Shown here: positions 1,834 through 62,602 of the stretch, in pieces
Numbering within the stretch: position 1 is the first letter of the stretch
Layout: each line of letters starts with the position of its first letter
From: Asterias rubens
Lineage: Eukaryota
Assembly (NCBI RefSeq): GCF_902459465.1
Contig: NC_047076.1
Location: forward strand, 9,672,001 to 9,736,000
Length of the DNA stretch: 64,000 nucleotides
Direction: 5' to 3'
Made by a program: the position numbers and the translations under genes
The notes under the pieces: model-generated
What the model was told of the DNA's origin: nothing
What the model saw: the letters and a program-made list of their open reading frames with translations, nothing else
Databases searched by the model: none

Positions 1834-2551
1834 ATTAGGGAATAACAGTGCGAGTACCCGGTCATCACTGCGTGGTAATGACCGGGTTGGTGGCTGGCGC
1901 TGTTAACGGACCGAGCCGGAGGCGAGGTCCATTAACAGCGCCAGCCACCAACCAAGGTCATTACCACGCAGTGAAGACCGGGTACGAACACTGTTATTCC
2001 CATTAATAAATACCTTTTTTAGCGAAATAAACGGCTAAAATTGTCCAAATTTTGTGACTTTTCTCTCAGCGGTACTTCCAGACATGTCAGGGGCCATATT
2101 TGAGCTTTTGATGGTTCCCATCTCTTTCGTGCGTTTATAATCACATTACTGATCTTTGAGACCAGTGACTCTTTTCATTAATGATTTGTTCAGCACCTTC
2201 ACTGGGGTCAAAGGAGGCAAATGATTGGACGATAGCTGTTCCTTGTGCATTAAAACGCGCGCATGAACTCGGCGTTAGTTCATACACGCGCACATGTTAC
2301 ACGCGCGCACTCAAAATTGATACATTTTCAGCGCGCGTACGCGTAAGTGCGCGAAGTTGCAATGAAACTAACAGGGATATAAATAAGCGTGCGATACAGT
2401 GTAATGCGCAAGGTTTACACAATGTATGCTGATTTAGTGGCCACTTATTCGCTATTTTCCAAAGCGGTCTTTATACCACCGTTAACACTCCCACACTTGA
2501 CCGGGTTTTGACCAATCAGAGACTTGAAACCGTCCAAGGTATTTATTAATA
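1834..2551 (+). mobile_element. Hairpin element family A, copy 1
   Basis: Hairpin 1838-2001 (apex cgagccggaggcgagg); inverted repeats attaataaatacct (about 2002) and aggtatttattaat (2537); second copy at 62013-62602. Confidence 0.85.
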
Positions 2552-4120
2552 TAAACTAAAACAATTTGTTTACCCCAAATCTGCCTAAAGTGGTCAAAAC
2601 ACAATTGCATCGGGCTGTATAGTGATTTCAAAAGTTTGTTTTGTTTAACAAGTCCCTTCCACTCTCAAAGTACATGTATATACAAAAAATCATTTACCTG
2701 ATAATAGCTAATATTAAATGTATAATTTTTGGCCATTTGTTTCATTTTCCTCTGCAAAAGTGCTAACTTTCTGGCAACACTGTTTTCGCGCACTTGAAAC
2801 ACCAAACATGTTATTGCATTTTTATGTAGGTTGGTATCTTCCAACTTTAAAAGTGTCATTAAAAGTGGCATTAAAAGTGGCATTAAAAGTGCCACTTTTA
2901 GATTTATGAGCCACTTCAATACCCCAATTTTTCGCTATAAGAAAATATGACAAAAGCACCCCTATTTGAAATAACAGTTTTATCCAAAGTTTTCAATATG
3001 GTTGTGCAATATGTGTGCAAGACAAACCCCTACTTTTCCCTCTTTAGACGTACCAGTGCTTTCATGTTACCTATATTTCAATACTTCAATACTTAACTAC
3101 AGGTAAAAACAAGATATATTTTGTAGTAGAGAGGTTTCGCTAGTGTAGAGATACAATACAGGAGCTCATACACGTCCTAGAAAAACAGATACTGTTTTGC
3201 AGACTTTTAGTTGTATTTTTGTCCTAGATCAAAAACATTTCCCACGGAATTGCTTTCACTGGTATCGTGCTAGATATAGACAGATTTTTTAAAAGTTATT
3301 TGCACGCAAAACGATGAGAAAATGCACTGTTTTAAGCATGGGGGCTCTATCAGTTATGTTTGATATAAAAACACTCATGATGGATGCGAGTGCACTCAAG
3401 TTAAACATACATGTACCAATAGTTTGTGAAACAAAAATCCAACACGCAGTTGACGTGAACGGATACGGTTATCATATCCGTATGTGTATTTGTATCCACG
3501 CTTGCAAAAACTCTCTATTATATGTGCCCATACCTACTAGGAGTTTTGCCAAAATCCATTTTGTTTAAAGTCTGTCACCTTTTTAAAATTATCTTTGATT
3601 TTAACAGCGACCCAGTCCTGGAGTATTCTAATGTGTTCATAATGCACCGCTTTTGATGTAGTGACTACCAGTTGTTTTTGTTTCTTAAAACCTCATGTCT
3701 CTTACAGATGTATCCACCTTGTTTCAACAGTCATCTGATAAAAGTTTAAGTTTGGGGGTTGGGTTTCTGAAGTTTGCACTCACCTTTAGAGTTTTCTTGT
3801 AAAGTTTTGATTTACTAACATCTCTTTTGCACAGAAGAGATTTACGTTAGAAGGATATTTTAGCATCAAACTTTTAATTTCAAACCTTTCAATGCAATTT
3901 TACACATTGTGTGCACATATGACAAGAATTCTATATAAAAACATAATAAAAATTTCTCTTGCCATCGGAAATTGCAGGAATATCACATGGTACAAGACAT
4001 GGAACTGGGTAAACACAATAGGGTAATACATGTACATAATATGCAAATAACGTATTGGACTGTAACAGTTCTCCCTCCCTCCTTCAGTTACTTTATGTGA
4101 AAATTTGACAAAATAATACA

Positions 4121-4201
4121 CACATAATGAATGTTTATGAGTGCAATGGTGCGAATATGTTCATGAGTTGAAAGATGGAATGTTCTATTCAACGAGGCGG
4201 A
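4121..4201 (+). mobile_element. Family B fragment (first hairpin arm only)
   Basis: Nearly identical to 35681-35761. Confidence 0.85.
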
Positions 4202-4525
4202 CGAACCCCATCCACCAGTTTTCCGTAGAGTATCTGCTTGGGTAGTTGGGAGTCGTCCATACGTACGAGGTGTCCACTCCAACGTAGCTGTCTGGCAAGC
4301 AACATGGACTCGACACTGGCCATACCAGCCCTGTGAAGAACCTCGTTGTTAGTGATATGGTCAGACCACTTGATGTTCAGGATGGTACGAAGATGGCGGA
4401 GTTGAATTTGATTAAGTTTCCGGATATGTCTTTGGTATACTGTGTATGTTTCAGTTGAGTAGAGAAGAGATGATAGTACCACTGCCCTGTACACCATACA
4501 TTTAGTAGAGGTTTTGATGCGACGA
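4202..4525 (-). mobile_element. RTE-clade LINE, C-terminal fragment
   Basis: VYRAVVLSSLLYSTETYT...LRWSGHLVRMDDSQLPKQILYGKL (ORF 4189..4497). Confidence 0.9.
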
Positions 4526-4529
4526 GGTT

Positions 4530-4760
4530 TTGGAACTGCCCAAATGGTGTGACAAAGGCTCTTCTTGGTTTTGCGTCTTAACAGATAAGTATTTGGTAGT
4601 ATCCCTTTGTAAGGTCAAGAGTAGATACGATTTTCGACTGTCCAACTTTATTCATGATTTGGTCAAACTGAGGCATGGGTTACGCATCAAGCTTGAAAGT
4701 ATTCTAATCATAATTTTCAGAATCTGGACCATACATGTATTCAGTACCAACCTTCGGCAT
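4530..4760 (-). mobile_element. Ty3/Gypsy reverse transcriptase fragment
   Basis: Hand translation gives DA*PMPQFDQIMNKVGQSKIVSTLDLTKGYYQI...AFVTPFGQFQ. Confidence 0.8.
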
Positions 4761-5959
4761 GTTTCTGTTGCAGCGATCAGCAGTGAGTCAGTGCATTAAA
4801 TTTGAGAAATCGCCAACTCCTGAACTGAATAGGCCGTTGATTTAAATAAAATAGTTGATTATCTGCATCTCATATGTTAACTCATTTTGATCATCTTTTA
4901 TCTTACTTTTTATCATCACCCCTGTTCTGCTGAAAAGGGTTGTACATGTACATGTATACAAATTAATCAACAAGAAAATTTACAGTATTTTTCAGAAAAA
5001 TATCAGTTCAATTTAGCATTTACATGTAGGAAGTCAGCAGTGCAACTTATACAAACGTTATGTTGATAAGTGACACCGGGTATTTAACAACCTTTTATCT
5101 AATTTAAAAAACATGAACAGAATTTATTGTGCAGGAAATGGAATTTGTACTTTTTTGAAACGAAAAATCATTGGCCCTATTTTGGATTCACACCAGTGTA
5201 TACTCAATGGAGATCTAGCATCATCAACTCATGTTTAGATTTCTCTTCCGTAGTGCATGTAATACCCCTAGTTGATAATTCGCCCATCAATTCAGAGACA
5301 TTCATTCTGTGAAAAGTGGGCTCTGCCAAAGTGAATCTAATTGCTATGACTAAATTAACTTAATACGCCAGGCAATTGCCCATGAACCTCATTAAATATT
5401 GTCAGGAAGAACATCAATTTAAATCAAATTCAAAAATCAAATCCCCCACCAAAATTATTTACGTGTATGAAATACAAAATACAGCTTAGTCTGTAAATAA
5501 ACGCATTACAAACCACACAGAGCTCACCCATGGGGATACAGAGTACCAGACCAAACAATAATTATCATGAAAAAGTCTTACCCAATGTGTACGAAATCAC
5601 AAGTACATTAGGTTCAATATTGATCAATATGCATATAAATACTGATCAGATCGGTTGCAATGTGAGCTTATGACAATACCAAATAATTATAATAAATACC
5701 CATATCACCAACTAAAGTTCGGTCCAACTTGCTGTGCAAGTTCAATTCAGTTTCAGTCAAATTTATAGTTGGTTTGACAATCAAGTTAAAATCAAAGTTC
5801 GCATTGTTCTTTTTAGACTTTCAATTTCCAGAAATTGTGAAACTTTGCTTCGATATTCAAACTGTGGATACAAATACGCCCCCACCAGCCTACATAAATC
5901 AGAAAGGTGGAGGAGGGGGCCACGCCGCAGTAAAAATGTAAGACCAGTTATTCGCCGGA

Positions 5960-33100: not shown

Positions 33101-36100
33101 CGGTTGTTTCCCCAATAGCCTCAAAGTTTCCTACATCAGACCGATCATCAAAAAACCAAACCTGGACAAGGAGGTACAGTATTCAAAAACTATAGACCAG
33201 TTGCAAACTTAAATCATCTTGGAAAAGTCATTGAGTGGGTAGTTTCATCACGCACTTCTGATCACATTCATGCTTTCACCCTGTCCGACGTGTTCCAGTC
33301 AGCATACAAGCTTTTCCATGGGACAGAAGCTGCACTAGTCCGTGTGAGCAACGATATTCTTTCTGCAATGGACAAAAAAACCTAACAGCGCTAGTCCTGC
33401 TAGACTTGAGTGCTGCTTTTGACACTGTTGATCACATCATCCTTTTCTCTCGGCTCCTAGCATGGTGCAAATCGTATCTCTACAATAGAACTCGGCATGT
33501 ATGTATTGGCACCGTGGTAGCCGACCCTGTTGTTTTGAACTACTCTGTGCCACAGGGGTCCGTACTCGCCCAAAAGTGTCTGTGGTGCCCAAAAGCATGA
33601 CCACGCTACACCATATTTACAAGATCTTCACTGACTGCCGATTAGGGAGAGGATAGCCTTCAAGATCTTGGTTTATGCGTACAAATGCTTCAACAACACA
33701 GCACCTGGCTATTTATCCTCTTGCCTGTCTCTCCATCGGCCTGGCCGTCCAAGTCTACGATAAGCATCTGCCACTACTCGCCTCATGGAACCTAACTCGA
33801 TCAAACTTCTTAAGTCAGCTTCGTCGCACATTCTCTCATTTTGCTCCACACACCTGGAATGCACTCTCCACCTCAATCAGGAAATCTGACTCTCTTTGAA
33901 CATTTAAGAAGTGTATCAAACATTCTCTGTACCCTATCTATGCGCTGCCTTCTTGACGTAGTGGCGTTATACAAATGCCCGATATGTATGTATGTTATTT
34001 GCTATCACGTGAAGGACAATCCTCCAATCAAATGGCAAATGGCAATGGCAATGCTCTTCTCTACAGTCTTCCTAACAACCAGATTTCCCGTCTTCAACGC
34101 CTCCAAAATACTGCTGCCCCCATTGTGACACTGTCTAAGAAATCCTGTTCCATCACCCCCCATTCTGAAAGAACTACACTGGCTCCCTATCGCTCAAAGA
34201 ATCATCTTCAAGCTGATGCTTATTGTCCACAAAGCACTTAATGGCAAGGCTCCCCACTATATTTCTGAACTTCTTCAAGTTTACACTCCATCAAGAAATC
34301 TTCCATCAAGTTCCATGCTTCTTCTCATTGAACCCAAGTCTCGACACTCATGGGGATACAGGTCTTTTTCTTCAGCTGCGCCACGCATCTGGAACTCTCT
34401 ACCACTTAATCTTAGATCTTGTCTTTGTACCACAACATTCAAATCTCTTCTCAAAACTTATCTTATGTGACAGGTTTTCAAGGACTAATACTGTTGTGTC
34501 TGGTTTTCTTTGTTTTGTTTTGTTTTGTTTTGTTTTGTTTGTTGCTGGTGTTTAGGCGGGAGATCGTACATTCACTGTTACAGCAGCAAAAGAGTGGAAT
34601 GAACTTCCCTCCTATATTAAATCTGCTCCATCAGTGGATGTGTTTAAGAAGGTTCTCAAAACATACCTCTTTCCTAATTGATTTTCTATTGTTGTTTTGT
34701 TTGTATACTGTTTAATATACTGCTCTTTCTATTGTAAACGCTGTGATATGGTTTTACTATGAATAGCGTACCTAAATGCAACATAGTAGTAATATTAATA
34801 ATCATGCGTTAAAGTAGAGTTGACAATTTAACTCAATATGAGTCAAGTGCATAAAGAGCATCAAATATAATATATTATATAACACCCAAGCAGATCCTTG
34901 CCATTTGATTGGAGGATTGTCCGTCACGTGATAGCAAATAAAAGTACCATTGCACGCTGAGTCACTCGCCGTGCTTGTTCGTTCCATCCGAAAAGTACCA
35001 TTCGTGCCAGCGTGCAATGGTACTTTTCGGATGGAACGAAAAAGCTGAGTAAAAACATCACTGCGTGCGCGTGTCTTTGGTAACGCAGCAGGTGTTACTG
35101 CAAGAAGGCATAGTAAAATTACTAGCATTCGGCTTCTACAGTTGAAATTGTTTGTTTTGAAAGTTGTTTCTTTCAATCAAAATGACAAAGTTCTACTTGG
35201 ATGTTATATAAAACAAATAATGAATGTTTTTCATTCGTGCAATGGTGCGAATATGTTCATTCGTTGAAAGCTGGAATGTTCCATTCAACTCGGCTCCGCC
35301 TCGTTGAATAGAACATTCCAGCTTTCAACTCATGAACATATTCGCACCATTGCACTCATAAACATTCATTATGTGTATACTAATTGCCAGTCAATTGCAT
35401 AAAGAGCATCGAATATAATATACTAATGGCCAGTCAATTGCATAAAGAGCATCGAATATAATATACTAATGGCCAGTCAATTGCATAAAGAGCATTGAAT
35501 ATAATTTACTAATAGCCAGTCAATTGCATAAAGAGCATTGAATATAATTTACTAATAGCCAGTCAATTGCATAAAGAGCATGGAATATAATATACTAATG
35601 GCCAGTCATTTGCATAAAGAGCATCGAATATAATATACACTAATGGCCAGTCATTTGCATAAAGAGCATCAAATATTATACACATAATGAATGTTTATGA
35701 GTGCAATGGTGCGAATATGTTCATGAGTTGAAAGATGGAATGTTCTACTCAACGAGGCGGATTGAAAGATACAACTTTCAAAACAAACAAAGCGTAGGCC
35801 TACAATTTTTAATTGTAGAGGCCGAATGCTAGTAATTTTACTAATATGCCTTGCAGTAACACTGCTGCGTTACCAAAGACACGGGCACGCAGTGACGATT
35901 TTACTCAGCTTTTTCGTTCCATCCGAAAAGCACCATTGCACGCTGGCAGCGTGCAATGGTACTTTTCGGATGGAACGAAAAAGCACGGTGAGTGACTCAG
36001 CGTGTATTGGTACTTTTATTTGCTATCACGTGACGGACAATCCTCCAATCAAATGGCAAGGATCTGCTTGGGTGTTATATAAAATATACTAATGGCCAGT

Positions 36101-39100
36101 CAATTGCATAAAGAGCATCAAATATTATACACATAATGAATGTTTATGAGTGCAATGGTGCGAATATGTTCATGAGTTGAAAGATGGAATGTTATATTCA
36201 ACGAGGCGGAGCCGAGTTGAATGGAACATTCCAGCTTTCAACGAATGAACATATTCGCACCATTGCACGAATGAAAAACATTCATTATTTGTTTTATATA
36301 ACATCCAAGTAGAACTTTGTCATTTTGATTGAAAGAAACAACTTTCAAAACAAACAATTTCAACTGTAGAAGCCGAATGCTAGTAATTTTACTATGCCTT
36401 CTTGCAGTAACACCTGCTGCGTTACCAAAGACACGCGCACGCAGTGATGTTTTTACTCAGCTTTTTCGTTCCATCCGAAAAGTACCATTGCACGCTGGCA
36501 GCGTGCCAGCGTGCAATGGTACTTTTCGGATGGAACGAAAAAGCACGGCGAGTGACTCAGCGTGCAATGGTACTTTTATTTGCTATCACGTGACGGACAA
36601 TCCTCCAATCAAATGGCAAGGATCTGCTTGGGTGTTATATAAAATATACTAACGGCCAGTCATTTGAATAAAGAGCATCAAATATAATATATTATATAAC
36701 ACCCAAGCAGATCCTTGCCATTTGATTGGAGGATTGTCCGTCACGTGATAGCAAATAAAAGTACCATTGCACGCTGAGTCACTCACCGTGCTTTTTCGTT
36801 CCATCCCAAAAGTACCATTGCACGCTGGCACGCTGGCAGCATGCAATGGTACTTTTCGGATGGAACGAAAAAGCTGAGTAAAAACATCACTGCGTGCGCG
36901 TGTCTTTGGTAACGCAGCAGGTGTTACTGCAAGAAGGCATAGTAAAATTACTAGCATTCGGCTTCTACAGTTGAAATTGTTTGTTTTGAAAGTTGTATCA
37001 AAATGACAAAGTTCTACTTGGATGTTATATAAAACAAACAATGAATGTTTTTCATTCGTGCAATGGTGAGAATATGTTCATTCGTTGAAAGCTGGAATGT
37101 TCCATTCAACTCGGCTCCGCCTCGTTGAATAGAACATTCCATCTTTCAACTCATGAACATATTCGCACCATTGCACTCATAAACATTCATTATGTGTATA
37201 CTAATGGCCAGTCATTTGAATAAAGAGCATCAAATATAATATACTAATGGCCAGTCATTTGCATGATTTGTGAAGATTTTATGTACATGTGTGAAATTTT
37301 TTGATAAAGAGTGTTGACCTGTTCAAACTGGACGTTGCGGAGCTCTATTTAATATTTTGTTATGTTCATAAATATTTTGTTTTGTTGGACTGATTTTTAT
37401 CTGCTTTTCACAAACCTGAACATCTTGGGTTTTTAATCAAACAAAGCACTACATTTCTAGTCTCTTTGTATTTGTTCATAATTCATGCAGGTCAAAATGG
37501 ATGAGTTGGAAGAACATAAAATAGCAACCTGGAGAGGTATGTATGAAAAGTCTTTTCCAAAATTACATTCAGTTAATGATTGTGAACTGCTTTAAAGACA
37601 CTGGACACTATTGGTAATTGTCAAACACCTGTCATCTCACTTGGTGTATCTCAACATACTCATAAAATGACAAACCTGTGAAAATTTGAGCTCAATTGTT
37701 GGTCCTCGAAGTTGCAAGATAACTATGAAAGAAAAAACACCATTTTCACACAAAGTTGTGTGCTTTCATAAACTAAATGCTTGATTTCGAGACATCAAAA
37801 TATAATTCTGAGGTCTCGAAATCGAATTCATCAAAAATTACTTCCTTCTCAAAACTATGTCACTTCAGAGGGAGTCTTTTCTCACAATGTTTAATACTAT
37901 TAACCGCTCCCCATTACTCGTTAGCAAGTAAAGTTTTATGCTAACAATTATTTTTAGTAATTACCAATAGTTTCCACTGCCTTTCAGTTACTTATCACTA
38001 TGTAAATTATGAGGCAATATCAAAGCCATGCAAAAGAAATTCAAAATTGCAAATGTAAATGAACTTAGTTTACAGAACTATGATGCTGATATATATATGG
38101 GCTGATGTATGCACATTATCAATGGCTCAGACAATATCATTGTCCATGTACTTGTGGTATTTGGTAGACAACAAACAACATAGGCTATGGTCAGATACAA
38201 TACAAAAGTTAGGACCAAACTGGTTTAGGATATTAGCTTATACATGTTCATTGAGACATCGTACACAATGCCAACCAATGCTCACACACTGCTAGTCAAG
38301 CACAAATAAATCCTGACTTTTTCCTCAAATGTCATAATTTTTTTTTATAAAGATGTCTTTAGGAGAGTTCTATTTGAATAAGGACCAACCTCCCCAGAAG
38401 GGATGGCATGTTTGTTCCAAGTTAACGTACTTGTAGTGTAAACAAATAATGTTTTGGATACAGAACCAAAAACCTATTTAACTTATTTCAGCAGATCTTC
38501 TGGTCTGCTGGAAAATTAAGAGGTTTTAAAGCCCATCATTTTCCAAACTGAATAAGGGTGGACATTTATGTACATTTCGTCCCCTTTTGTTTGCAGTTGG
38601 TCAGCGTATTATTATGCCTGGGCTTTGTTTTTCCATCATGCACTTTGCATCTGACAGTGTTGCGCTTCATTTGACCCAGATAAAGAGAGTGGCTCCATGA
38701 ACTATGGTGTGGTTCTGCTGTGTCTACTTGCAGTAGTCTTGGTTTCATTTTGACAATGATATTGTCTATAACGAAAAACACATTTTGCTCAAAACATTTA
38801 TAAAACGATCTTGCTAAAAGGCACAGAGATTTTTTTTGTATTTCATGTGGCATGATAATGCAAAGGTATATTCAATGTATTAAAAACCTGATTCTGAACC
38901 ACAGAAAATAGAGTAGAGTTAGAGAAGTGAGATCCTGGTAAGATTGTAATTCTACTCAGTGACAGTCAGGCCATGAGATCTACATGGGTATGTGAGTAAA
39001 GATTCAAAAACATATATTGAGTCTCTTCTTGAGAATGAGATCTACATGGGTATGTGAGTAAAGATTCAAAAACATATATTGAGTCTCTTCTTGAGAATGA

Positions 39101-42100
39101 GATCTACATGGGTATGTGAGTAAAGATTCAAAAACATATATTGAGTCTCTTCTTGAGAATGAGATCTACATGTATGTGAGTAAAGATTCAAAAACATATA
39201 TTGAGTCTCTTCTTGAGAATGAGATCTACATGGGTATGTGAGTAAAGATTCAAAAACATATATTGAGTCTCTTCTTGAGAATGAGATCTACATGTATGTG
39301 AGTAAAGATTCAAAAACATATATTGAGTCTCTTCTTGAGAATGAGATTTAGAGTGATTTCACAGACATGTACATGTAATGATACTAAATAACAGAATTAA
39401 GCAAAGGATATATTCAATGGTGTTTTATTTACAGATGTCCTAAGTAAAAAAGCCAGACCTCTTGTGTGGATTGACCCAGACGCAAGGTAATGAAAGAAAT
39501 AATTATTCCTTTAATGGATTGTAAACGCTCATTCCTGCTTATTTCAAGTGTAGACTAATTTTTGAAGAAAAAAAATTAGTCTTGTTTGTAAATAAATTAA
39601 CACACAGCAGTCTTTGACTTAAGAGATGTTAAATTTGCATCGGGGATAAAGAATATTAATTATGGGTAAAAACCAAAATTCATAAATACCTCAGACAGTT
39701 TCGCTATTTCTATTGGTGGAAAGCGCGTCACACGGGTGTGTATAAACCCTTGTTTATGGCCAGTAAAAAGTGTTGAAACATGGGCGTGAAACGCGAGTTT
39801 GCAACTGTGCTTATAAGACAGTTTCTTCATTTTTATTGGGCGAGAGCAACCGCCGAGACAGTTGTGCCACATCATGCGATACGCGCGACGCGCACAGCAT
39901 TCCCTTATAAGGAGTTGTTTACCCGAGGGCCTTGACTGGGCCTTACCATTTCATAGCTGGAGGGGTGTTGTGTTGAAAGAAATCATTGAAAAATTATAGT
40001 TTTTGCATGAATTTGACTTTTTGACCATAAGTGTTGATGTTTTTTTGACCGAAAAGGTATTTATGAATGGGAATCAAAGTGTGTTGAATCGGTTTTCAAC
40101 TAGTGGTTTAAACCCGACGAGGCCTGGTTCTTGATAATTTACTCTGACTTTGTCTCGGTAAAATTATCAAGAACCAGGTCTCGTTGGGATTAAACCACTA
40201 GTTGAAAACCTCTTCACCACACATTGATTCCCTTATTAATGGTCTTTGACTTATCTAAACTCATATTGGTGATTGGTATACATACATAATATTTCTCCTT
40301 AAATTTAATGTTCTACTTGTATCTCTTTTAAATGTAGATTGTTTTGTAATAAAATCTCTTTGAAGATGAGTCAAAAAGCTTTTACTGTAGGTCATAGGCG
40401 ACGGTTCAGTGGTTAGGTCCTGTCAGTGCAATAATTGAGTTTGGAATGTGGTGATTTGTTGGTTGATGAATTATTCTGGATTGGAATTGAGGATCTGGCT
40501 ACCTTGAGCAGGGTCAAACTACCCAAACAACTTGAGAATATCTGGGTATGTTAAAGCTAGTAGTTACATTCACTGCTACATATCTTGGCTGCTACATGTA
40601 CATTGTAAATGTACATGTAAATACTCACTTTGGGGGTTTACTTGATAAAAAACCAGCTCAGCCAAAAATTACCTTACTTTCATACTAGTCATGGTCACAG
40701 TTAGTCAGCACAGACAGGACTCGATTTAGACACAAGCCCGACGTGCACTCACTATTTAAGAGTGCGGCGGGCTAGTCAAAGACTGGTTAGTCAGAAATTA
40801 GCAACTTTAATGCACTTGTTCACTGCTACACATTTGATGCAGTACCAACACATTTTTAACCCACGCATTGCTGCTACAAACTTGAACAAGCGGGAAAATG
40901 ATCGACCGTTGTGTGCATCGTACAGAGAACAATGCACATAGTTTGGAAAAAAATAGTGTGGCGAGAGAGATTTGTTAATAAATACTACATGTAGGTTGAA
41001 CTTTTGTATGAAATTAAACTGAAAGAAAGTTGATATTGCATACATGTACGTTGGCCACATGTCTTCAAATCCAATCCCTGGAAATTTGAGTTTTGTCTTT
41101 CCCTTCATCGCCTTCATATTTTTTGAATGGAACAATAAAGGGGAGAGCTTTTTTTAAACTGCATGTCACAGTTTCTACACGCCACTGCATGCCTAAAAGT
41201 TTGCAAAATAAAGTGTAAACAAATGTCTTCAGAAACTAATAGCTAGTTTTGTATCTGAAATTCCAAGTACTAAATGTCACTTTTTAAAGTGTAAAAACAT
41301 TGTCACTGACACCGAGCCTGCAGGATCAGCAGACGGGGGAAAATCGTCAGGTTCATGGCACTTTCATTACACTCTTTTACCCACTCAATTTACATTTTCC
41401 TTGCCTCCTTTTACTCTACTCTACAAAACAGCCTACATGTACTTCTGCTTTTTACAAACACACACATTGATTGTTCACTGATAAAGGTTTCAAAATTAAA
41501 CATGTTAAAGTCACCTGGAAATAGAATTTGTTTTTCAAACATAAGATTAACAATAAAACAATTTGTTTTAAGTATTTGTTTGTCACGATTAATATGTTTA
41601 AAAAAAGATAAAGTTGTTTTTGGGGGTTATACTCCACCTACCCCTTTTATGACGTCAATCAAGGCAGACTTTGCCTCGATCGAACATCCCCCCCCCCCCC
41701 CCCCCGCCCTTCGAATTTGCCTGCAATACATAGAGTAAACACATGTGCAAAGTACATGTAAGTAAAAGTTGTGAGTTTGTACGTTTTGAAAACAGTTTTT
41801 TTTTTTGCACTTTTCTGGCAATGCCAACCAGGTGTATTGCTGCTGGATGCAGCAAGACAAATGAAGATGGGGTCAGTTTGCATAGTCAGACTCACATGAG
41901 CAATAGTGGTCAGGTCCAAAACTTTTTCAGCGCTGTGCAGCGAACACTTGCAGCGAACAATCCTGAACACACCACACATTTGACATAAAGAGTTCTAAAA
42001 AGTTATTCTAAAAAGTTATTCTAAAAGTTATTCTAAAACACAACGCCATCCCAATAATTTGTCCAGCTAGTGGAAAATCGACGAAGGTACCTGAACGACG

Positions 42101-57100: not shown

Positions 57101-59644
57101 TTTTCGAATTGTACAAACTCACGACTAGGACTTAGATGTACTTGCTTGTACGTGTGTTCGATGTTTGATCGAGGCAAAGTCTGCCTCGATTGACAGCACA
57201 AAAGGGGTAGGCGGAGTCACAACTTTATTTATTTTTTAAAACATAAAAATTGTTAAAAACAATTACTCAACAAAATATTTTATTGTTCAGAAACATATAC
57301 TCTAATGTTTGAAAAAAAAAAAATCTATTTCCAGGTGACTGAAGCGGTAGATTATTTCTTTGCAGCCCTTTTTCGGCAGTGTCTGCAAGTTTTCCATAGG
57401 TCCTGCTTTGCCTAGGCATTAAAAATGCCTGTCAATGTACATGCTTCATTTGTGTCCCCTCACAGTTGCGCTTGCTGGCGCTTCTCGTCAAGAAATCCAG
57501 TGTGCCACTGGTTAGCCACGGATGCCTCTGGTACCTGAGGACGCCTATCGTTTCTGAAGCGGCGGACAGAATCACTGAGTGTACATGTATGGTGGGCCAA
57601 GAGGACTCCAGATCTTCTTCGAGGGCACTGAGGGCTTTAGACTTGTTGCTGACAGCGATATTGTAATTAGTGGCGATGTTTGGGCTTACTTTGAGGGATC
57701 TCACCTCAAGATGCTTAGTTGTTGGTTTTGGAGGTTTAAGGTAGGGCTGGAGTTTGACTGTGCCAACAACTAGTCGATGGTCCGTTATTGCTGGGGCCTC
57801 TGCACCCCTGAAGACACGATAGGTGCAGAAGATCGAGCAGTCCCTAGTCAACATATGGTCCAACTCCTTCCTGGTGTGGCCATCATTGGATAAAACCAAG
57901 ACATTCGGTGAATTTCTTTTCGTCTATAAAAGAAGGAGCCAACACTATTGGTAATTGTCAAAGACCAGTCTTCTCACTTGGTGTATCTTTACATATGCAT
58001 AAAAGTAACAAACCTGTGAAAATTTGAACTCAATTGGTCGTCGGAGTTGTGAGATAACAATGAAAGAAAAAACACCCTTGTCACACGAAATTGTGTGCTT
58101 TCAGATGAGACCTCAAAATCTAATTCTGAGGTCTCAAAATCAAATTCGTGGAAAATTATTTCTTTCTTGAAAACTCGTTTCTCACGTTTTAAACAATCAA
58201 CAGCTCCCCATTACTCGTTACTAAAGAAGGTTTTATGCTAATAATTATTTTGAGTAATTACCAATAGTGTCCACTGCCTTTATTTGTCCTTTATCATTTA
58301 ACTGTTAGAAGTAAAATTAAAAAACAAATTAAAAATTGATCCTTGCCGCCTATACCAAATTATGCCAGTCAATATGCGTTTTATAACGTGGCATGTATTC
58401 TAGCTGGAATGTGTCACATCTAAACTTTTAGGTCCTGTAACAGTAACATCACCAGATTTGACATGAGGTCAACTATATATATGAAAATCATTTGTGAAAA
58501 TTTGATGTTATTATAAAATATTTGAAAAGCTTTATTTAAATGGGGTGGTTTTATTTTGTTGCAGGTTCATCGCCTTGTAGTTGTTGATAGCGAGAATCAC
58601 GTTGTTGGAGTTGTATCTTTGTCTGATCTGCTAACTTTCCTTGTGCTTAGACCAGCAGGTAAGTTGCATTGGGTTTATTGAAAGAAAGAAAATCCTCAAG
58701 GATAGAAGGATATCTAAATGGCAAGAAGGGTCATTGTATCATGCTTAAAATGCCTTGGTGGAAACGGACACATTGCCTTGGTCATGTTGGTCATTGTATC
58801 ATGCTTAAAATGCCTTGGTCAAAACGGACACGTTGCCTTGGTCATGTTGGTCATTGTATCATGCTTAAAATGCCTTGGTCGAAACGGACACATTGCCTTG
58901 GTCATGTTGGTCCATGAAAAGCATTTGAAACCAATTGTTATGAAATTGATATGGTTAATAAGATGTTTTAGAAGTAGAATATAATGTTCCCCACAAATGT
59001 CTGCGAACTAACACTGTCGGCCATTTTATTGAGTCAAAAACCATAAATTAGCTCCACAAAAGTAGCGTGCCGTGACATTGTTTGCCCAAACAAGGGAAGA
59101 TCATGTCACAGCAGACAAGGTCTGTGTCTTAAAGTCCTCCACATTGTGTAGAAGTTTTTGTTTTGTTTTTTTCAGTTCTGGGTGGATGAGTTTCTGTGGC
59201 TATTTTGTGTTTATTGTGAAAAAAATTCACATACACTGTACACAGCAAGGATCCATTTTGTCTGTGCATTGTTACAGAGTGTAATCACTCGGTGAAATCG
59301 GGCTTTCCCTTTTTTGTGCCTTGTGAAATGAAACATTAGATTTCACCTCCTGATTAAATTCTGTGAAAAATGTGCTTATATTGTATCCAATATTTTTATA
59401 ATTATATGGATATTTCATAAGAACCTTCTGAAAGCCTGCACAGTTGTGCATTAAAAGTTAAGATGGCAACCACCTATTCTACAGTTTTGCTGCCGACACT
59501 TAAATAAAGTACATATCTTGACTCAAATATCTTGACTGAAAATTTTTTAGTTTATCATTTTTAAAATACACATTGCATAACCATTTCGTTACAGGAGTTA
59601 CAAGTCGAAAATCCAGCATTAATTCACCAGACAGTGAGAAGTAA
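15084..59644 (+). CDS. PRKAG: 5'-AMP-activated protein kinase gamma subunit (4 CBS motifs); 11 coding exons joined, 5' end possibly incomplete
   Basis: Hand-spliced exons 15084-15184, 23302-23383, 24249-24307, 37491-37536, 39435-39486, 43223-43349, 47089-47169, 47495-47617, 49266-49412, 58565-58658, 59595-59644 give 962 nt in one open frame, all introns GT-AG. The translation has AMPK-gamma motifs [98 protein letters not shown] and VSLSDLL. Confidence 0.97.
16361..16507. repeat. 37-bp tandem repeat, 4 units
   Basis: cgctaacattgtgataatgtgatgcctgtgRttgtac at 16361, 16398, 16435 and 16472. Confidence 0.95.
17031..18688 (+). repeat. Diverged ~620-bp direct repeat pair (17031-17648 and 18061-18688)
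   Basis: Collinear match from agttgagagataaat to aattattgacatgcttt. Confidence 0.85.
17682..18055. mobile_element. Kolobok-like MITE with TTAA target duplication
   Basis: TTAA at 17678-81 and 18056-59; ends tagtgtccactgcct; related to 37596-37982 and 57941-58279. Confidence 0.7.
22401..22746. repeat. Foldback element: ~135-bp inverted arms around a ~70-bp spacer
   Basis: 22401-22538 is the reverse complement of 22610-22746; the same peptide appears in ORFs 22242(+) and 22608(-). Confidence 0.9.
22981..23040 (+). mobile_element. Diverged remnant of a DIRS left terminus
   Basis: agtctacttcactctacttaccggtagag...ttgcatattccctat aligns with 28182-28238. Confidence 0.7.
23302..23383 (+). CDS. 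PRKAG: AMPK gamma exon B ([28 protein letters not shown])
   Basis: tctgcag acceptor, GTAAGT donor, 82 bp; also visible in ORF 23230..23436. Confidence 0.97.
24249..24307 (+). CDS. PRKAG: AMPK gamma exon C ([20 protein letters not shown])
   Basis: caacag acceptor, GTAGGA donor, 59 bp. Confidence 0.95.
24990..28010 (+). mobile_element. Degenerate L2-clade LINE (endonuclease to RT), interrupted by a nested insert
   Basis: [12 protein letters not shown]...DLMIIT, resuming ETWL at about 26385; [40 protein letters not shown] and [11 protein letters not shown]. Confidence 0.85.
25200..26380 (+). mobile_element. 5'-truncated CR1-like LINE with A-rich tail nested in the L2 copy
   Basis: YADDIFLF...[25 protein letters not shown], ending in aaaaataaataaaaataa. 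Confidence 0.7.
28320..29460 (+). pseudogene. DIRS gag-like ORF region (Pro/Ser-rich, probably partly deleted)
   Basis: ORFs 28224..28790 and 28769..29701 lie between the left ITR and the RT. Assigned by position only; boundaries approximate. Confidence 0.55.
29463..30642 (+). pseudogene. DIRS RT (frameshifted, YxDD core and most of RNase H deleted) fused in frame to a Dam-like N6-adenine methyltransferase domain
   Basis: [36 protein letters not shown] and [13 protein letters not shown] are RT motifs. IFM joins directly to [18 protein letters not shown] (end of RNase H). Then DLFAS...YAFPPF...[12 protein letters not shown] gives the methyltransferase motifs. Confidence 0.9.
30500..31523 (+). 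pseudogene. DIRS tyrosine recombinase with one premature stop (TAA 30597-30599)
   Basis: [18 protein letters not shown]...YRSAIAAIH...SRRRSELH...TKNQ...LCPVRAL...AHNVR...ACW...CYLKD contains the R-K-HxxR-W-Y catalytic set. Confidence 0.92.
31802..31912 (+). repeat. DIRS internal complementary region (ICR)
   Basis: 31802-31851 is the reverse complement of the left terminus (28181-28230); 31852-31912 is the reverse complement of the right terminus (32100-32157). Confidence 0.95.
32420..33960 (+). mobile_element. Degenerate L2-clade LINE
   Basis: [41 protein letters not shown] and SVPQGSVL, then the 3' region. Confidence 0.88.
34040..34790 (+). mobile_element. Two further L2 3'-end fragments
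   Basis: [12 protein letters not shown]...[26 protein letters not shown], and a second [17 protein letters not shown] tail after a (ttttg)n tract. Confidence 0.8.
34875..35379 (-). mobile_element. Hairpin element family B, copy 1 (non-autonomous, Crypton-like by inference)
   Basis: 505 bp; ~75-bp-arm hairpin with GAGGCGGAGCCGA apex, 13-bp inverted repeats (ttatataacaYcc) flanking the body; near-identical to copies 2-4. Confidence 0.85.
35380..35676. repeat. 43-bp minisatellite (tactaatggccagtcaattgcataaagagcatcgaatataata), ~7 units; further units at about 34840-34874, 36083-36125, 36643-36691 and 37201-37264
   Basis: Period 43 read directly (aaagagcatc at 35401 and 35444). Confidence 0.95.
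35677..36082 (+). mobile_element. Hairpin element family B, copy 2 (second hairpin arm deleted)
   Basis: Same termini as copy 3; deletion starts after aacgaggcgga (35761). Confidence 0.85.
36126..36642 (+). mobile_element. Hairpin element family B, copy 3
   Basis: 517 bp, full hairpin 36126-36290. Confidence 0.85.
36692..37200 (-). mobile_element. Hairpin element family B, copy 4
   Basis: 509 bp, inverted relative to copy 3. Confidence 0.85.
37491..37536 (+). CDS. PRKAG: AMPK gamma exon D ([15 protein letters not shown])
   Basis: atgcag acceptor, GTATGT donor, 46 bp. Confidence 0.95.
37596..37982. mobile_element. Kolobok-like MITE
   Basis: ttaa+agacactggacactattggtaatt ... ttaccaatagtttccactgcct imperfect TIRs. 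Confidence 0.75.
38973..39347. repeat. 62/60-bp minisatellite, 6 units
   Basis: gagatctacat(gg)gtatgtgagtaaagattcaaaaacatatattgagtctcttcttgagaat repeated. Confidence 0.97.
39435..39486 (+). CDS. PRKAG: AMPK gamma exon E ([18 protein letters not shown])
   Basis: tttacag acceptor, GTAATG donor, 52 bp; phases fit both neighbouring exons. Confidence 0.92.
39678..40235. mobile_element. Hairpin element family C
   Basis: ttcataaatacct (39679) and aggtatttatgaa (40055) inverted repeats, then hairpin gggaatc...gattccc 40069-40232. Confidence 0.75.
41509..42400 (+). mobile_element. THAP-remnant DNA transposon derivative (Kolobok-like); right boundary approximate
   Basis: ttaa+agtcacctggaa terminus; [18 protein letters not shown] at 41821 and ALCSEH in another frame; related to 56544-57340. 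Confidence 0.7.
43223..43349 (+). CDS. PRKAG: AMPK gamma exon F ([42 protein letters not shown])
   Basis: T-rich tract plus ctag acceptor, GTAAGT donor, 127 bp. Confidence 0.96.
43387..43864. mobile_element. TTAA-flanked MITE (Kolobok-like), 37 bp downstream of exon F
   Basis: TIRs acagccaataaaggatgatctcaaatat and atattgagatcgtcctttattggctct; TTAA at 43383-86 and 43865-68. Confidence 0.8.
44060..46870 (-). mobile_element. Degenerate RTE-clade LINE (endonuclease-RT-C-terminus)
   Basis: [18 protein letters not shown]...[42 protein letters not shown] and [20 protein letters not shown]. Confidence 0.92.
47089..47169 (+). CDS. PRKAG: AMPK gamma exon G ([27 protein letters not shown])
   Basis: tttttaag acceptor, GTGAGT donor, 81 bp; inside ORF 47017..47217. 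Confidence 0.93.
47495..47617 (+). CDS. PRKAG: AMPK gamma exon H ([41 protein letters not shown])
   Basis: gacag acceptor, GTAAGT donor, 123 bp. Confidence 0.96.
47976..48746. repeat. 31/32-bp minisatellite, ~24 units
   Basis: tattcttgctatacaactgccattgttatca and the variant ...gctacaacttcagccattgttatca. Confidence 0.97.
49266..49412 (+). CDS. PRKAG: AMPK gamma exon I ([49 protein letters not shown])
   Basis: tgtag acceptor, GTAAAT donor, 147 bp. Confidence 0.96.
49598..50266. mobile_element. Non-autonomous DNA element with tcacac/gtgtga ends and repeated gaatattc motifs
   Basis: CpG-rich block with imperfect inverted ends and an internal duplication (49742-49830 vs 50030-50105). Confidence 0.55.
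50846..50994. other. Assembly gap (149 N)
   Basis: Run of N. Confidence 1.
51250..52100 (+). mobile_element. Unclassified interspersed repeat, copy 1 (gagttgac motifs)
   Basis: Diverged reverse-complement match to 55160-55950 (for example caagatggcggccgac vs gtcggccgccatcttg). Confidence 0.7.
52690..53775 (-). mobile_element. CR1-like LINE fragment (endonuclease end to RT start)
   Basis: [57 protein letters not shown]. Confidence 0.85.
55160..55950 (-). mobile_element. Unclassified interspersed repeat, copy 2, nested in an RTE
   Basis: Lies between collinear RTE fragments. Confidence 0.7.
56544..57340 (-). mobile_element. THAP-remnant DNA transposon derivative (Kolobok-like)
   Basis: TIRs agtcacctggaa and ttccaggtgact; [13 protein letters not shown] from 57074 and PALCSKHF in another frame. 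Confidence 0.75.
57941..58279. mobile_element. Kolobok-like MITE (same family as 37596-37982)
   Basis: acactattggtaattgtca ... ccaatagtgtccactgcct. Confidence 0.75.
58565..58658 (+). CDS. PRKAG: AMPK gamma exon J ([31 protein letters not shown])
   Basis: ttgcag acceptor, GTAAGT donor, 94 bp. Confidence 0.96.
58730..58912. repeat. 60-bp tandem repeat, 3 units
   Basis: gtcattgtatcatgcttaaaatgccttggtNNaaacggacacRttgccttggtcatgttg. Confidence 0.95.
59595..59644 (+). CDS. PRKAG: AMPK gamma terminal coding exon ([16 protein letters not shown])
   Basis: ttacag acceptor, phase-1 compatible, TAA at 59642-59644, followed by AT-rich sequence with AATAAA signals. Confidence 0.8.
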
Positions 59645-59820
59645 ACTGGAGCAAGTATGATGCCAAGCCACATGTTGAATCCAAGAGATAACTTGCACCT
59701 TGATGTACAACCATTTAATGGTAATTGGTGTATGTAATTTGAATATGAAGTGGAAGCTACTTGTAAAATAGTGTCAGCCTTAAGTAGATGTAGATTGATG
59801 ATCCATGTATTCTATAGATT

Positions 59821-60079
59821 AATAAAGGTACTTATAATCTAGAAATGCTGTGGTTGTAATTATAGGTCTGCTCTCCCTTATAGACAAAATAATAAATCAG
59901 CTACATGTCACACATTTTATTGATGTTAAAGGTACAATCCAGAATTGGTAAGAAGAAAAAAACCCATCTAAGATCACAGGTTTACATACAGCTTACATGG
60001 TCTAATGATGATGATAGTAGAAACCATCCCTTGAAATATTTCTGTCTGAAATTTGATGTTTAGATGAGAAATAAATAAA
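59821..60079 (+). terminator. Candidate polyadenylation signals of the AMPK gamma transcript
   Basis: AATAAA at 59821, 59891 and 60070/60074, downstream of the stop codon. Confidence 0.5.
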
Positions 60080-60206
60080 CAAATTTCCAGTTTGCAGTTT
60101 ATCGCTCAGTGAGCGTTTCATTAAATTTCTTTTTAAATCAATTTCATGCAAAATGTGTTATTGGTTTTTTCACTATTTTCTTTTAACAGTAATAATATTA
60201 AGAGAC

Positions 60207-60728
60207 ATTCATAAATACCTCAGACAGTTTCGCTATTCCTATGGATGGAGAGCGCTTCACGTGGGGGTGTTTAAACGGTTGATAGTGACCAGCTGGAGCA
60301 CTGTTTATAACCGGTTGTTTTCGGATACTACGTGCTAGTCTCGGTGCGAGACGGATCTTGTTACGGGCGATGCGGGCGCTGTTGGTAAGTTGGCCGTGCT
60401 GTGTGTGAAAAGAAAACTAGAACGTCTTGCACGAAGACTATACGCATACGAACGGATCCTGAAACTGTCCTCTCAGTCATAACAATGCAACATACGGACG
60501 TAGCCTACAGAGCTCAAGCACGTCAGAAACGAATAAGTTTGAAAGAGTTTCTTACTTTTTTACGCCTTTTAACCAAAAAGGCATTTATGAATGGGAATAA
60601 CAGAGTATTGACTTGTCTAAAACGGCCGTTTAATGCCCTGCAGGGTCGTTGCCATGCGAATTATACGGCAACGACCCTTCCGGTTCTAAACGGCTGTTTA
60701 AGAACTCGTCGCTACCCTTTTATTCCCT
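60207..60728. mobile_element. Hairpin element family D (shares ~30 terminal bp with family C)
   Basis: attcataaatacctcagacagtttcgctatt start, aggcatttatgaat at 60579, imperfect hairpin gggaataa...ttattccc 60593-60727. Confidence 0.75.
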
Positions 60729-60749
60729 TGTTTATATAGCGCTCTTACA

Positions 60750-61800
60750 CAAGGTACCACAGCGCTTTACAAGAAACTATACAATAAGCAAATAAATAAT
60801 GGCACTGATAATGGGAAAACAGTCAAAGCAATCAATCATTGAACAAGTTATGTGACCCCTGCGGAATGGATTTGATGAAGGAGACGGTTCCAAAGGCGCA
60901 GAGCATGTGCGTATAAAGCATGATCCCCAGCAGCGGATTGCACCTTTGGAACTGCCAAGAGTGTACTGTCTGAACCAGAGCGACGGCCGGTCTTCCAGGT
61001 TGGTGAATCTTGATGAGACTGGTGAGATATGTAGGAGAGGTATGGTGAAGACATTTGTATACAATGGTGAGAATCTTGAAAACAATACGCTGATGGACTG
61101 GGAGCCATCGAAGTGGTGTGACGTGGTCGTATTTACGACACTTTTTATCAGTTTTGCAGCCCGGTTTTGGACGCCCTGAAGGCCTTTGGTATCGGATGAT
61201 GAGATCCCATGTAGCAATGAGTTAAAAAAGTTGAGTCTTGATGTGACAACTGCCCGAACTGCCCTTTTCGCATGTTGAGTTGTCGGCAAATGGCCTTATG
61301 CGTCCTATATTGCGAGCGACAAAGAGAAGACACGTGATGGTTCATCTTCAGAGCAGAGTCAAACTCCACCCCAAAGTTCCAAACAGTAGTGGAAGGTGCA
61401 ATGATCTCGTTGTTGATCCGAAGTGAAATATTTGCGAGGGGAAATAGCGACAACCATGAACTGAGTTTTGCTGCAGTTAAGTTTCAGCATGTTGTGAGCC
61501 ATCCACGTCCGTAATGCTCTCTGACAATGACGATAGACCAGCTTTGATGGAATTATGACTCCTGGGATCGACTGCAATGAATAGTTGCACATCGTCCGCA
61601 TAGGAATGGTATTGCACGTCCTCATGCTGCTTGATGATGATGGCGGTTGGACTGGTGTACATGGTGAACGGTTGTGGGCCAATAACAGAGCCTTGTGGGG
61701 ATGCCAAAGTCAAGAGATTTTGGTTCTTTTGACCCGGATGGCAGATCGATCTCAAACTTTTGCAGATTTGTCAGATGGATTATGTAAAGTTCTTACACTG
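60750..61800 (-). mobile_element. L2-clade LINE, RT to 3' end
   Basis: PQGSVIGPQPFTMY...YHSYADDVQLF, WMAHNMLKLNCSKT and VTSRLNFFNSLLHGI. Confidence 0.9.
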
Positions 61801-62012
61801 CAAGCAACTGTTTTGTTAGCAAAAAGCAATTTTGTAATGTTCCTTTTTGTGAATTTCTGGCTTATTGTTTGAATTGTTAATGTACAACTCGTAATGCAAT
61901 ATGATTATACCAACTGAATAATTATGCTCTTCCGTATGTATGTTGTACAAATGTCCATGCTTCCTGTGTATAATTACAACAAAGTTAGGTTTCAGAGTGA
62001 AATTTGAAACAC

Positions 62013-62602
62013 TATTAATAAATACCTTGGACGGTTTCAAGTCTCTGATTGGTCAAAACCCGGTCACGTGTGAGAGTGTTATTGATGTTATAAAGACCAA
62101 CTTTGGAAAATAGCGAATAAGTGGCCACTAAATCAGCATACATTGTGTAACCTTGCGAGTTGCACTGTATCGCACGCTTATTTATATCCCTGTATGTTTC
62201 ATTGCAACTTCGCGCACGTACGCGCGCTGAAAATGTATCAATTTTGAGTGCGCGCGTATAAACTGACGCTCATGCGCGCGTTTTAATGCACAAGGAACAG
62301 CTATCGTCCAATCATTTGCCTCCTTTGACCCCAGTGAAGGCGCTGAACAGATCATTATTCACAAGAGTCACTGGTCTCAAAGATCAGTAATGTGATTAAC
62401 GCACGAAAGAGATGGGAACCATCAAAAGCTCAAATATGGCCCCTGAACAGGTCTGGAAGTACCGCCGAGAGAAAAGTCACAAATTGGACAATTTTAGCCG
62501 TTTAATTCGCTAAAAAAGGTATTTATTAATGGGAATAACAGTGTTCATACCCGGTCATTACCATGCAGTGAAGACCGGGTACTCGCACCGTTATTCCCTA
62601 AT
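62013..62602 (-). mobile_element. Hairpin element family A, copy 2 (hairpin centre deleted)
   Basis: Reverse-complement match to 1834-2551 along its length. Confidence 0.85.

What the first reader, a model, noticed from the sequence alone, without database searches (positions are those of the whole stretch)
1834..62602. Four element families share one architecture: long terminal hairpin, short inverted repeat, body, inverted repeat
Seen: family A (1834-2551, 62013-62602; IR attaataaatacct), family B (34.9-37.2 kb; IR ttatataacaYcc), family C (39678-40235) and family D (60207-60728; both IR ttcataaatRcct) each have a 65-80-bp-arm palindrome at one end. Directly after it comes a 13-14 bp repeat that recurs inverted at the far terminus. 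A, C and D hairpins all start with gggaat, and A and B have similar GC-rich apices (cgagccggaggcgagg and cgaggcggagccgag). The bodies are unrelated. Inference: this is a conserved cis-architecture for one mobilisation mechanism, most plausibly non-autonomous Crypton-type elements. The family label is not verified.
Basis: partly seen in the sequence, partly recalled or inferred. Interest (0 to 1): 0.7.

Follow-up and report, generated by a model that had tools for sequence, protein, structure and literature searches.

The report
Hairpin-ended Helentron-type non-coding transposons
The four repeat families are real and share one end design, but it is the known design of rolling-circle (Helentron/Helitron2-type) jumping elements, not of Cryptons; here the end hairpin is unusually long, and the coding partner element was not found.

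Summary
Families A, B, C and D each have a 13-14-nt inverted repeat (IR) at the 5' tip, a non-coding body, and the same repeat inverted. A 135-165-nt hairpin follows (68 nt in copy A2) and then a 2-8-nt tail.

All four are abundant in this 418-Mb genome, with 683 to 4,139 first-look candidates each. Hairpin and body form one unit: 39 of 39 other scored C copies are full length, and 82% of 1,423 exact 3' repeats run straight into GGGAAT.

The bodies are not wholly unrelated. The first ~57 nt align without gaps in all four (IR, 20 nt, ATTGG, 10 nt, GTCACGTG).

This layout (short terminal repeats plus a stem-loop after the right repeat) is the published hallmark of Helitron-like group 2 (HLE2: Helentron/Helitron2). 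Their non-coding derivatives are called HINEs, or DINE-1 in Drosophila.

Two family A copies and the B copies have filled and empty sites that show exact insertion with no target duplication. The genome encodes Helentrons (Rep, DUF6570, PIF1 helicase, endonuclease, OTU).

The Crypton label is not supported. No coding partner with these ends was found near 11 Rep loci.

The very long hairpin, the shared 5' module and the shared A/B apex motif are mildly new. This scan has already noted the same element type elsewhere in this genome.

The parts
1836..2550 (-). Family A copy 1, complete: 5' IR 2537-2550 (ATTAATAAATACCT), 3' IR 2002-2015, 164-nt hairpin 1838-2001, tail TA 1836-1837
   Evidence: ends fixed by empty sites of sister copies
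62014..62600 (+). Family A copy 2: 5' IR 62014-62027, 3' IR 62517-62530, hairpin 62531-62598 reduced to 68 nt by a deletion between CCCGGTC repeats, tail TA 62599-62600
34875..35379 (+). Family B copy 1: 5' IR 34875-34887, 3' IR 35199-35211, hairpin 35213-35376, tail ATA
35674..36082 (-). Family B copy 2, internally deleted: 5' IR 36070-36082 and body joined directly to the right hairpin arm (35674-35761); breakpoint at the hairpin apex
36126..36642 (-). Family B copy 3: 5' IR 36630-36642, 3' IR 36294-36306, hairpin 36129-36292, tail ATA
36692..37200 (+). Family B copy 4: 5' IR 36692-36704, 3' IR 37020-37032, hairpin 37034-37197, tail ATA
39678..40240 (+). Family C: 5' IR 39678-39691 (ATTCATAAATACCT), 3' IR 40055-40068, 164-nt hairpin 40069-40232, AT-rich tail; 3' edge uncertain by about 3 nt
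60207..60729 (+). Family D: 5' IR 60207-60220, 3' IR 60579-60592 (one mismatch), 135-nt degraded hairpin 60593-60727, tail TT
4113..4201 (-). Solo right arm of a family B hairpin, running from the apex to the 3' end (98% to B4)
33995..34038 (-). Short fragment of a family B 5' region carrying the ATTGG...TCACGTG module

Best explanation
A, B, C and D are non-coding members of one lineage of Helitron-like group 2 (HLE2) rolling-circle transposons, of the kind called HINE or DINE-1 in other animals.

Shown here:
- Each element is 5' IR, a conserved ~57-nt leader, a family-specific body, 3' IR, a long hairpin and a short tail.
- It moves as one unit.
- It inserts exactly, without target duplication, into AT-rich sites.
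- It can sit head to tail.
- The genome encodes Helentron Rep-helicase-endonuclease proteins.

Inferred mechanism:
- A Helentron Rep/helicase supplied in trans nicks at the 5' tip.
- It unwinds the strand and stops at the 3' IR plus hairpin.
- The ends are then joined into a circle.
- In that joint the two IRs lengthen the hairpin stem by 14 bp. The joint therefore lies inside a near-perfect palindrome of about 190 nt, which would be the enzyme's substrate.
- The circle then integrates at a new site.

The coding partner of these four families was not identified.
For: Architecture:
- It matches the published HLE2 definition: a 12-16-nt IR at both ends and a stem-loop after the right repeat (PMC11417382; also PMC4067079, PMC7492417, PMC5148889). 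Shown.

One unit:
- 39 of 39 other scored C copies span the whole element.
- Copies of all four families end sharply at the same bases.
- In each of four runs, 26 to 135 contigs diverge exactly before 60206/60207.
- Of 1,423 exact 3' IR contexts, 1,165 run into GGGAAT.

No target duplication:
- Family A copies in L004 and L006 interrupt a MITE whose 8 or more uninterrupted copies read ...CTCAA^AATAATTATT^AGCAT.... The flanks rejoin exactly.
- The B copies rejoin a 43-nt minisatellite exactly, in both orientations.

Other support:
- A head-to-tail joint ...ATTCCC-TA-ATTAAT... is present in L005.
- Host enzymes: 13 Helitron_like_N loci; ORFs with DUF6570 (the HLE2 marker), Rep, PIF1, Exo_endo_phos and OTU.
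- One resident Helentron family shows the same layout with a short hairpin: 5' TTATCTCTGCC plus an internal repeat plus (TTC)n; 3' GGGCAGAGATA plus a 7-bp stem.
- Shared leader: IR, 20 nt, ATTGG, 10 nt, GTCACGTG in all four families. It occurs 1,214 times in the genome against 1 for the control.
Against: No Rep-coding element carrying these IRs, this leader or a long hairpin was found within 10 kb either side of 11 of the 13 Rep loci.

The two clean empty sites are T^A and A^A, with a 1-nt ambiguity, not the T^T usually reported for Helentrons. Published HLE2 sites do vary, for example TNAT^A (PMC5148889).

The hairpins are about ten times longer than those described for HINEs.

The circle-joint model was not tested.
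Confidence: 0.84

Rival explanations
1. Non-autonomous Cryptons, the first reader's label: elements moved by a tyrosine recombinase through recombination at short identical sequences.
For: Insertion leaves no target duplication. That alone would not exclude a recombinase.
Against: As I recall the literature (not re-read here), Cryptons lack terminal inverted repeats and end hairpins. These elements have both, in the exact arrangement defined for HLE2 (PMC11417382). Head-to-tail joints and resident Helentron genes fit rolling-circle elements. I did not search the genome for a Crypton recombinase.
Confidence: 0.02
2. Composite: an ordinary cut-and-paste MITE (the IR-body-IR part) next to which a separate palindromic MITE (the hairpin) inserted.
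For: The hairpin on its own looks like a foldback MITE. One unrelated palindromic element did insert into an A hairpin in L003, with a 2-nt duplication.
Against: The IR-to-hairpin junction is identical to the base in 1,573 copies. 82% of exact 3' IRs are followed by GGGAAT, about what mutation alone allows. Each family has its own hairpin sequence. There is no target duplication around either the IR-bounded part or the hairpin. Copies align end to end.
Confidence: 0.03
3. A hairpin-ended element class of its own, moved by an enzyme other than the Helentron Rep/helicase. Its resemblance to HLE2 ends would be convergent.
For: No coding partner was found. The hairpin length, the conserved apex and the CCAAT/CACGTG-like leader are not described for HINEs. 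Empty sites are not T^T.
Against: Every structural element present is the HLE2 one and in the HLE2 order. HLE2 proteins are encoded in the same genome. Absence of a partner rests on about 211 kb sampled around 11 loci.
Confidence: 0.1

Closest known systems
HINE / DINE-1 (Helentron-associated interspersed elements; Thomas et al. 2014, PMC4067079; Cg_HINE of the Pacific oyster, PMC7492417)
   Same: Non-coding and very abundant. A 5' inverted repeat of 11-15 nt has its partner near the 3' end, followed by a palindrome. No target duplication, AT/T-rich targets, tandem copies, association with satellite-like repeats, and many families that share ends but have unrelated insides.
   Different: Published 3' palindromes are short (5-10 bp stems in the mite; 'short palindromic sequence' in the oyster). 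Here the arms are 60-80 nt and abut the repeat directly. The 5' repeat is exactly terminal rather than 2-4 nt inside. These four have no microsatellite or internal repeat beside the 5' repeat. The two clean empty sites are T^A and A^A, not TT. The partner is not identified.
Helitron2 / HLE2 in general (HELIANO survey, PMC11417382; Fusarium FoHeli, PMC5148889)
   Same: Asymmetric terminal inverted repeats of 12-16 nt with the stem-loop after the right repeat. Evidence for end-joined (circular or tandem) forms. Target sites that vary between lineages, including TNAT^A.
   Different: Those descriptions rest on coding elements, whereas only non-coding elements were seen here. Hairpin length and the conserved 5' leader are not described there.
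The resident Helentron family of this genome (C2/C6/C11 copies, over 18 kb, 99% alike)
   Same: Same order of parts: a 5' repeat at the tip, then a 3' repeat followed by a hairpin and a tail. Head-to-tail joints occur.
   Different: Unrelated end sequences (TTATCTCTGCC...), a 7-bp hairpin stem, an internal repeat and a (TTC)n microsatellite at the 5' end. No sequence similarity to A-D.
Crypton (tyrosine-recombinase transposons)
   Same: No fixed-length target duplication.
   Different: As I recall the literature (not re-read here), Cryptons have no terminal inverted repeats and no end hairpin. Nothing here points to a recombinase.

Membership tests
HLE2 non-autonomous element (HINE / Helitron2-N) | Short (about 11-18 nt) inverted repeats, one at the 5' tip and one near the 3' end (asymmetric) | tested here: met
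   14/14 nt in A and C, 13/14 in D, 12/13 in B.
HLE2 non-autonomous element (HINE / Helitron2-N) | [quoted passage not shown] | tested here: met
   Hairpins of 135-165 nt (68 nt in the deleted A2) start 0-1 nt after the 3' repeat, z = -5.5 to -22. They are far longer than published ones.
HLE2 non-autonomous element (HINE / Helitron2-N) | Insertion without target-site duplication | tested here: met
   Two family A insertions were compared with 8 or more uninterrupted copies of the host MITE. B insertions were compared with uninterrupted minisatellite monomers (the B 3' edge is uncertain by about 3 nt).
HLE2 non-autonomous element (HINE / Helitron2-N) | Target usually between T and T (a tendency in the literature, with published exceptions) | tested here: inconclusive
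   The 5' flank base is T in 10 of 13 A copies. The two empty sites read T^A and A^A with a 1-nt ambiguity. B reads A^C and T^A. All sites are AT-rich.
HLE2 non-autonomous element (HINE / Helitron2-N) | Shares its ends with a Rep-helicase (with or without endonuclease) coding element | tested here: inconclusive
   None was found within 10 kb either side of 11 of the 13 Rep loci.
HLE2 non-autonomous element (HINE / Helitron2-N) | Host genome encodes HLE2 transposases (Rep, DUF6570 marker, PIF1 helicase, endonuclease in Helentrons) | tested here: met
   13 PF14214 loci. ORFs carry DUF6570, Helitron_like_N, PIF1, Exo_endo_phos, OTU and Herpes_teg_N.
Crypton | No terminal inverted repeats or end hairpins; mobilised by a tyrosine recombinase encoded between the same ends | tested here: not met
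   Inverted repeats and hairpins are present in all four families. Whether the genome holds a recombinase gene was not tested.
Cut-and-paste MITE (DDE transposase) | Inverted repeats at both extreme tips, flanked by a fixed-length target duplication | tested here: not met
   The 3' repeat is 137-170 nt from the tip, behind the hairpin. No duplication flanks the element.

The most novel reading that the evidence does not exclude
These families define a distinct echinoderm branch of Helitron-like group 2 in which the end signal has grown into a long hairpin. The hairpin has a conserved tip: a 3-bp stem with a TCC loop, between TC/TC mismatches, kept in A and B through a compensatory stem swap. 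A fixed 5' leader (ATTGG, 10 nt, GTCACGTG) is also conserved. On this reading, when the ends are joined the two repeats extend the hairpin into a palindrome of about 190 nt with the joint inside the stem. That origin-like structure, not the short repeats alone, is what the Rep protein recognises. It would give a defined DNA substrate for working out how group 2 Helitron-like elements start and stop, which is not known.
Probability: 0.25. Interest if true: 0.5.

Novelty: new member of a known kind. Interest (0 to 1): 0.3.

Why it matters
It corrects the family label from Crypton to Helentron/Helitron2 type.

It shows that these families together account for thousands of copies in this genome. 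The first-look candidates sum to about 10,000 and are rough figures, not copy counts.

For specialists, three details may be useful for testing what a group 2 Rep/helicase recognises. These are the roughly tenfold longer 3' hairpin, the apex motif shared by two otherwise unrelated hairpins, and the fixed 5' leader shared by at least a dozen spacer variants. The mechanism of this group has not been worked out biochemically.

If transcribed, thousands of 160-nt perfect hairpins would also be a likely source of double-stranded RNA. I did not test this.

Tried and rejected
- I looked for the coding partner. I fetched 10 kb either side of 11 of the 13 Rep loci and searched for the IRs, the junction motif, the 5' leader, long hairpins and any similarity to A-D. 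Nothing was found.
- Copy-to-copy alignment did not give clean ends for the C15, C24 and C92 Helentron families.
- A structure-based scan (hairpin plus adjacent repeat) over all held DNA found only known copies, plus artefacts inside the B cluster.
- Rfam found nothing inside the elements.
- Sequencing runs were available only as short contigs broken at repeats. They confirmed edges but gave no clean empty allele. One X1 contig joins 60208 to 60733 with an extra G, and I could not resolve it.
- A literature search for Helentrons in sea stars found nothing specific.
- I rejected the idea that the minisatellite is part of family B. Most of the 40 scored B copies elsewhere stop at the element's edges.
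- I considered that breakpoints at the hairpin tip mark a Rep nick site. Cleavage of hairpin tips by host nucleases explains them equally well, so I make no claim.
Full report
**What is there**

The window is part of contig C16 of a 417.6-Mb assembly. Earlier notes of this scan call the genome a sea star; I did not test that.

Reading the stated places and mapping motifs gives the same plan for every family. The parts, in order, are:
- a 13-14-nt inverted repeat (IR) exactly at the 5' tip;
- a non-coding body;
- the IR inverted;
- a long hairpin starting 0-1 nt later;
- a 2-8-nt AT-rich tail.

Coordinates:
- A1: 1836-2550 on the minus strand.
- A2: 62014-62600.
- B: four copies between 34875 and 37200, one of them internally deleted.
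- C: 39678 to about 40240.
- D: 60207-60729.

As single-stranded DNA the hairpins fold at -33 to -89 kcal/mol, z = -7.5 to -22 against shuffles. The deleted A2 hairpin gives -17 kcal/mol, z = -5.5.

The assembly gap at 50846-50994 (149 N) lies in none of the elements and more than 9 kb from the nearest. No claim depends on it.

**More than chance, and abundant**

The 20-nt junction of 3' IR and hairpin start occurs 4 times in the window against 0.03 expected. In the genome it occurs 1,573 times against 0 for the reversed control.

First-look candidates in the genome:

| Family | Candidates | Identity of scored copies to the window copy |
|---|---|---|
| A | 683 | 84-93% |
| B | 1,404 | 95-98% |
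| C | 2,829-3,815 | 89-94% |
| D | 4,139 | 78-87% |

B is the youngest family.

**Hairpin and body are one element**

- With 100-nt flanks added, 28 of 39 C copies begin at exactly the same base (39678), and most of the rest within 3 nt. All end within a few bases of 40237-40241 and span body and hairpin.
- D, A and B behave the same way.
- In each of four sequencing runs, 26 to 135 contigs diverge exactly before 60206/60207, the 5' tip of D.
- The 3' IR in its context, AAAGGTATTTATGAAT, occurs 1,423 times. In 1,165 of these (82%) it is followed by GGGAAT, about what 6-10% divergence allows. There is no population of bodies without hairpins.

**The families are homologous at their ends**
- A, C and D share about 25-86 nt at the 5' end and 31-45 nt around the 3' IR and hairpin start.
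- The first ~57 nt of all four, B included, align without a gap: IR, 20 nt, ATTGG (ATGGA in D), 10 nt, GTCACGTG.
- GATTGG-N10-GTCACGTG occurs 1,214 times in the genome against 1 for the control. The first 100 hits alone show about a dozen different spacer sequences, so more families exist.
- The tips of the A and B hairpins read TC-GCC-TCC-GGC-TC and TC-GGC-TCC-GCC-TC. That is 13 of 15 identical, and the two differences swap the 3-bp stem.

**What kind of element**

[quoted passage not shown] Insertion leaves no target duplication and is usually between T and T (PMC11417382).

The non-coding forms (HINE, DINE-1, Cg_HINE) show a 5' repeat, then a 3' repeat followed by a palindrome. They favour T-rich targets, make no duplication, and are often associated with tandem repeats (PMC4067079, PMC7492417). 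The term 'asymmetric terminal inverted repeats' and variable target sites, including TNAT^A, come from PMC5148889. The four families fit this plan part for part.

**Insertion chemistry**

Two family A copies (L004, L006) lie inside a MITE that also occurs at about 17.9, 37.6 and 57.9 kb of the window. Eight or more uninterrupted copies of that MITE read ...CTCAA^AATAATTATT^AGCAT....

The two A insertions sit at the two carets. The flanks rejoin exactly if the element is ATTAAT...ATTCCCTA, with a 1-nt ambiguity because of an A. So there is no target duplication.

The sites are A^A and T^A. Across 13 A copies the 5' flank base is T in 10.

The B copies sit in a 43-nt minisatellite. With the element taken as TTATATAAC...GTGTATA, both orientations rejoin the uninterrupted monomer exactly, at sites 6 nt apart. 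Copies elsewhere suggest the B tail may be 1-3 nt longer, so that edge is less certain.

L005 holds a head-to-tail pair with the joint ...ATTCCC-TA-ATTAAT.... Such joints are expected for rolling-circle elements.

**Enzymes in the genome**

Pfam Helitron_like_N has 13 matches at 12 loci, several inside open frames of 1,300-1,900 codons.

Pieces of two of them carry DUF6570 (given in PMC11417382 as the marker of group 2), Rep, PIF1 helicase and an Exo_endo_phos endonuclease. An upstream ORF has OTU and Herpes_teg_N protease domains. These are Helentrons.

One family (copies on C2, C6 and C11; over 18 kb; 99% alike) shows its ends:
- 5' TTATCTCTGCC with an internal repeat and a (TTC)n microsatellite;
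- 3' GGGCAGAGATA followed by a 7-bp-stem hairpin and a tail;
- in places the 3' end is joined directly to the next 5' end.

So the same order of parts is present in a coding element of this genome, with a short hairpin.

**What is missing**

None of the 11 Rep loci I fetched carries the IRs, the leader, a long hairpin or any similarity to A-D within 10 kb either side. The partner of A-D is therefore unknown, and mobilisation by a Helentron protein is inferred, not shown.

**Mechanism**

Shown:
- the layout;
- movement as one unit;
- exact insertion without duplication;
- head-to-tail joints;
- resident Helentron genes.

Inferred from what is established for Helitrons (a circular intermediate and a 3' hairpin as stop signal, as summarised in PMC5148889):
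- Rep nicks at the 5' tip.
- The helicase unwinds toward the 3' end.
- The IR plus hairpin ends the reaction.
- The ends are joined.

In the joint, as seen in L005, the 5' IR follows the hairpin after 2 nt and is complementary to the 3' IR before it. The stem therefore grows by 14 bp and the joint lies within a palindrome of about 190 nt. I propose this as the recognised structure; it is untested.

**Verdict**

This is a new member, or a set of members, of a known kind. The unusual details are the hairpin length, the shared tip, the shared leader, and sites that are not strictly T^T.

The scan has already met this element type elsewhere in this genome. Follow-up notes s1-150429 and s1-150658 also call it Helentron-type with an unusually long end hairpin. 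I reached the same reading before seeing them and tested it independently here.

Noticed in passing
L012 (family A copy); genome-wide count: The asymmetric tip of the family A hairpin occurs in both orientations relative to the arms. 7 of 38 exact matches and about 4 of 46 one-mismatch matches carry the flipped tip. This could be one flipped subfamily or repeated flipping between the inverted arms.
   Followed up: partly
window 35674-36082 and 4113-4201; L005 and L007: Four damaged copies (two of B, two of A) have a breakpoint at or within 1-2 nt of the hairpin's tip loop. Examples are a body joined to the right arm only, a solo right arm, and a deletion starting at the loop. Cutting of hairpin tips by host nucleases, or a step of transposition, could both explain this.
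   Followed up: partly
window 37591-37984, 57942-58282, 17945-18059; L002, L003, L004, L006, L010: A ~390-nt MITE with 17-nt terminal inverted repeats (GGACACTATTGGTAATT) lies within 400 nt of 5 of 11 family A copies. It was hit twice independently by A, 10 nt apart, which suggests a shared AT-rich target preference.
   Followed up: partly
window 62600/62601: In three runs (X1, X2, X3) contigs carry 13 extra letters (ATTACAACACCTC) exactly at the 3' tip of copy A2, between ...ATTCCCTA and the flank. This is a polymorphic indel at the element/flank junction.
   Followed up: no
window 60208-60733: One contig of run X1 joins 60208 to 60733 with one extra G, so it lacks almost exactly the D element. 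The same run also holds the filled form. It may be a deletion allele or a paralogue.
   Followed up: no
window 35377-35680 and flanks of all B copies: A 43-nt minisatellite (ACTAATGGCCAGTCAATTGCATAAAGAGCATCGAATATAATAT) hosts all four B copies, in both orientations, at two sites 6 nt apart. This is the subject of another note of this scan, s1-150173.
   Followed up: partly
L003, inside the family A hairpin: An unrelated palindromic element of about 160 nt is inserted into the A hairpin, with a 2-nt AT duplication.
   Followed up: no
window 20881-20926: A histone 3' UTR stem-loop (Rfam RF00032, 34.3 bits) suggests a replication-dependent histone gene nearby.
   Followed up: no
window 22437-22709 and 31855-32157: Two other large inverted repeats (100-nt arms at 98%; 58-nt arms at 100%) do not belong to families A-D.
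   Followed up: no
L013/L024, L014/L025, L022/L033, L023/L034 (contigs C2, C6, C11): Four copies of a Helentron over 18 kb long are 99% alike. They have duplicated 5' ends in tandem and a 45-nt internal tandem repeat inside the long ORF region. The high identity suggests recent activity.
   Followed up: partly
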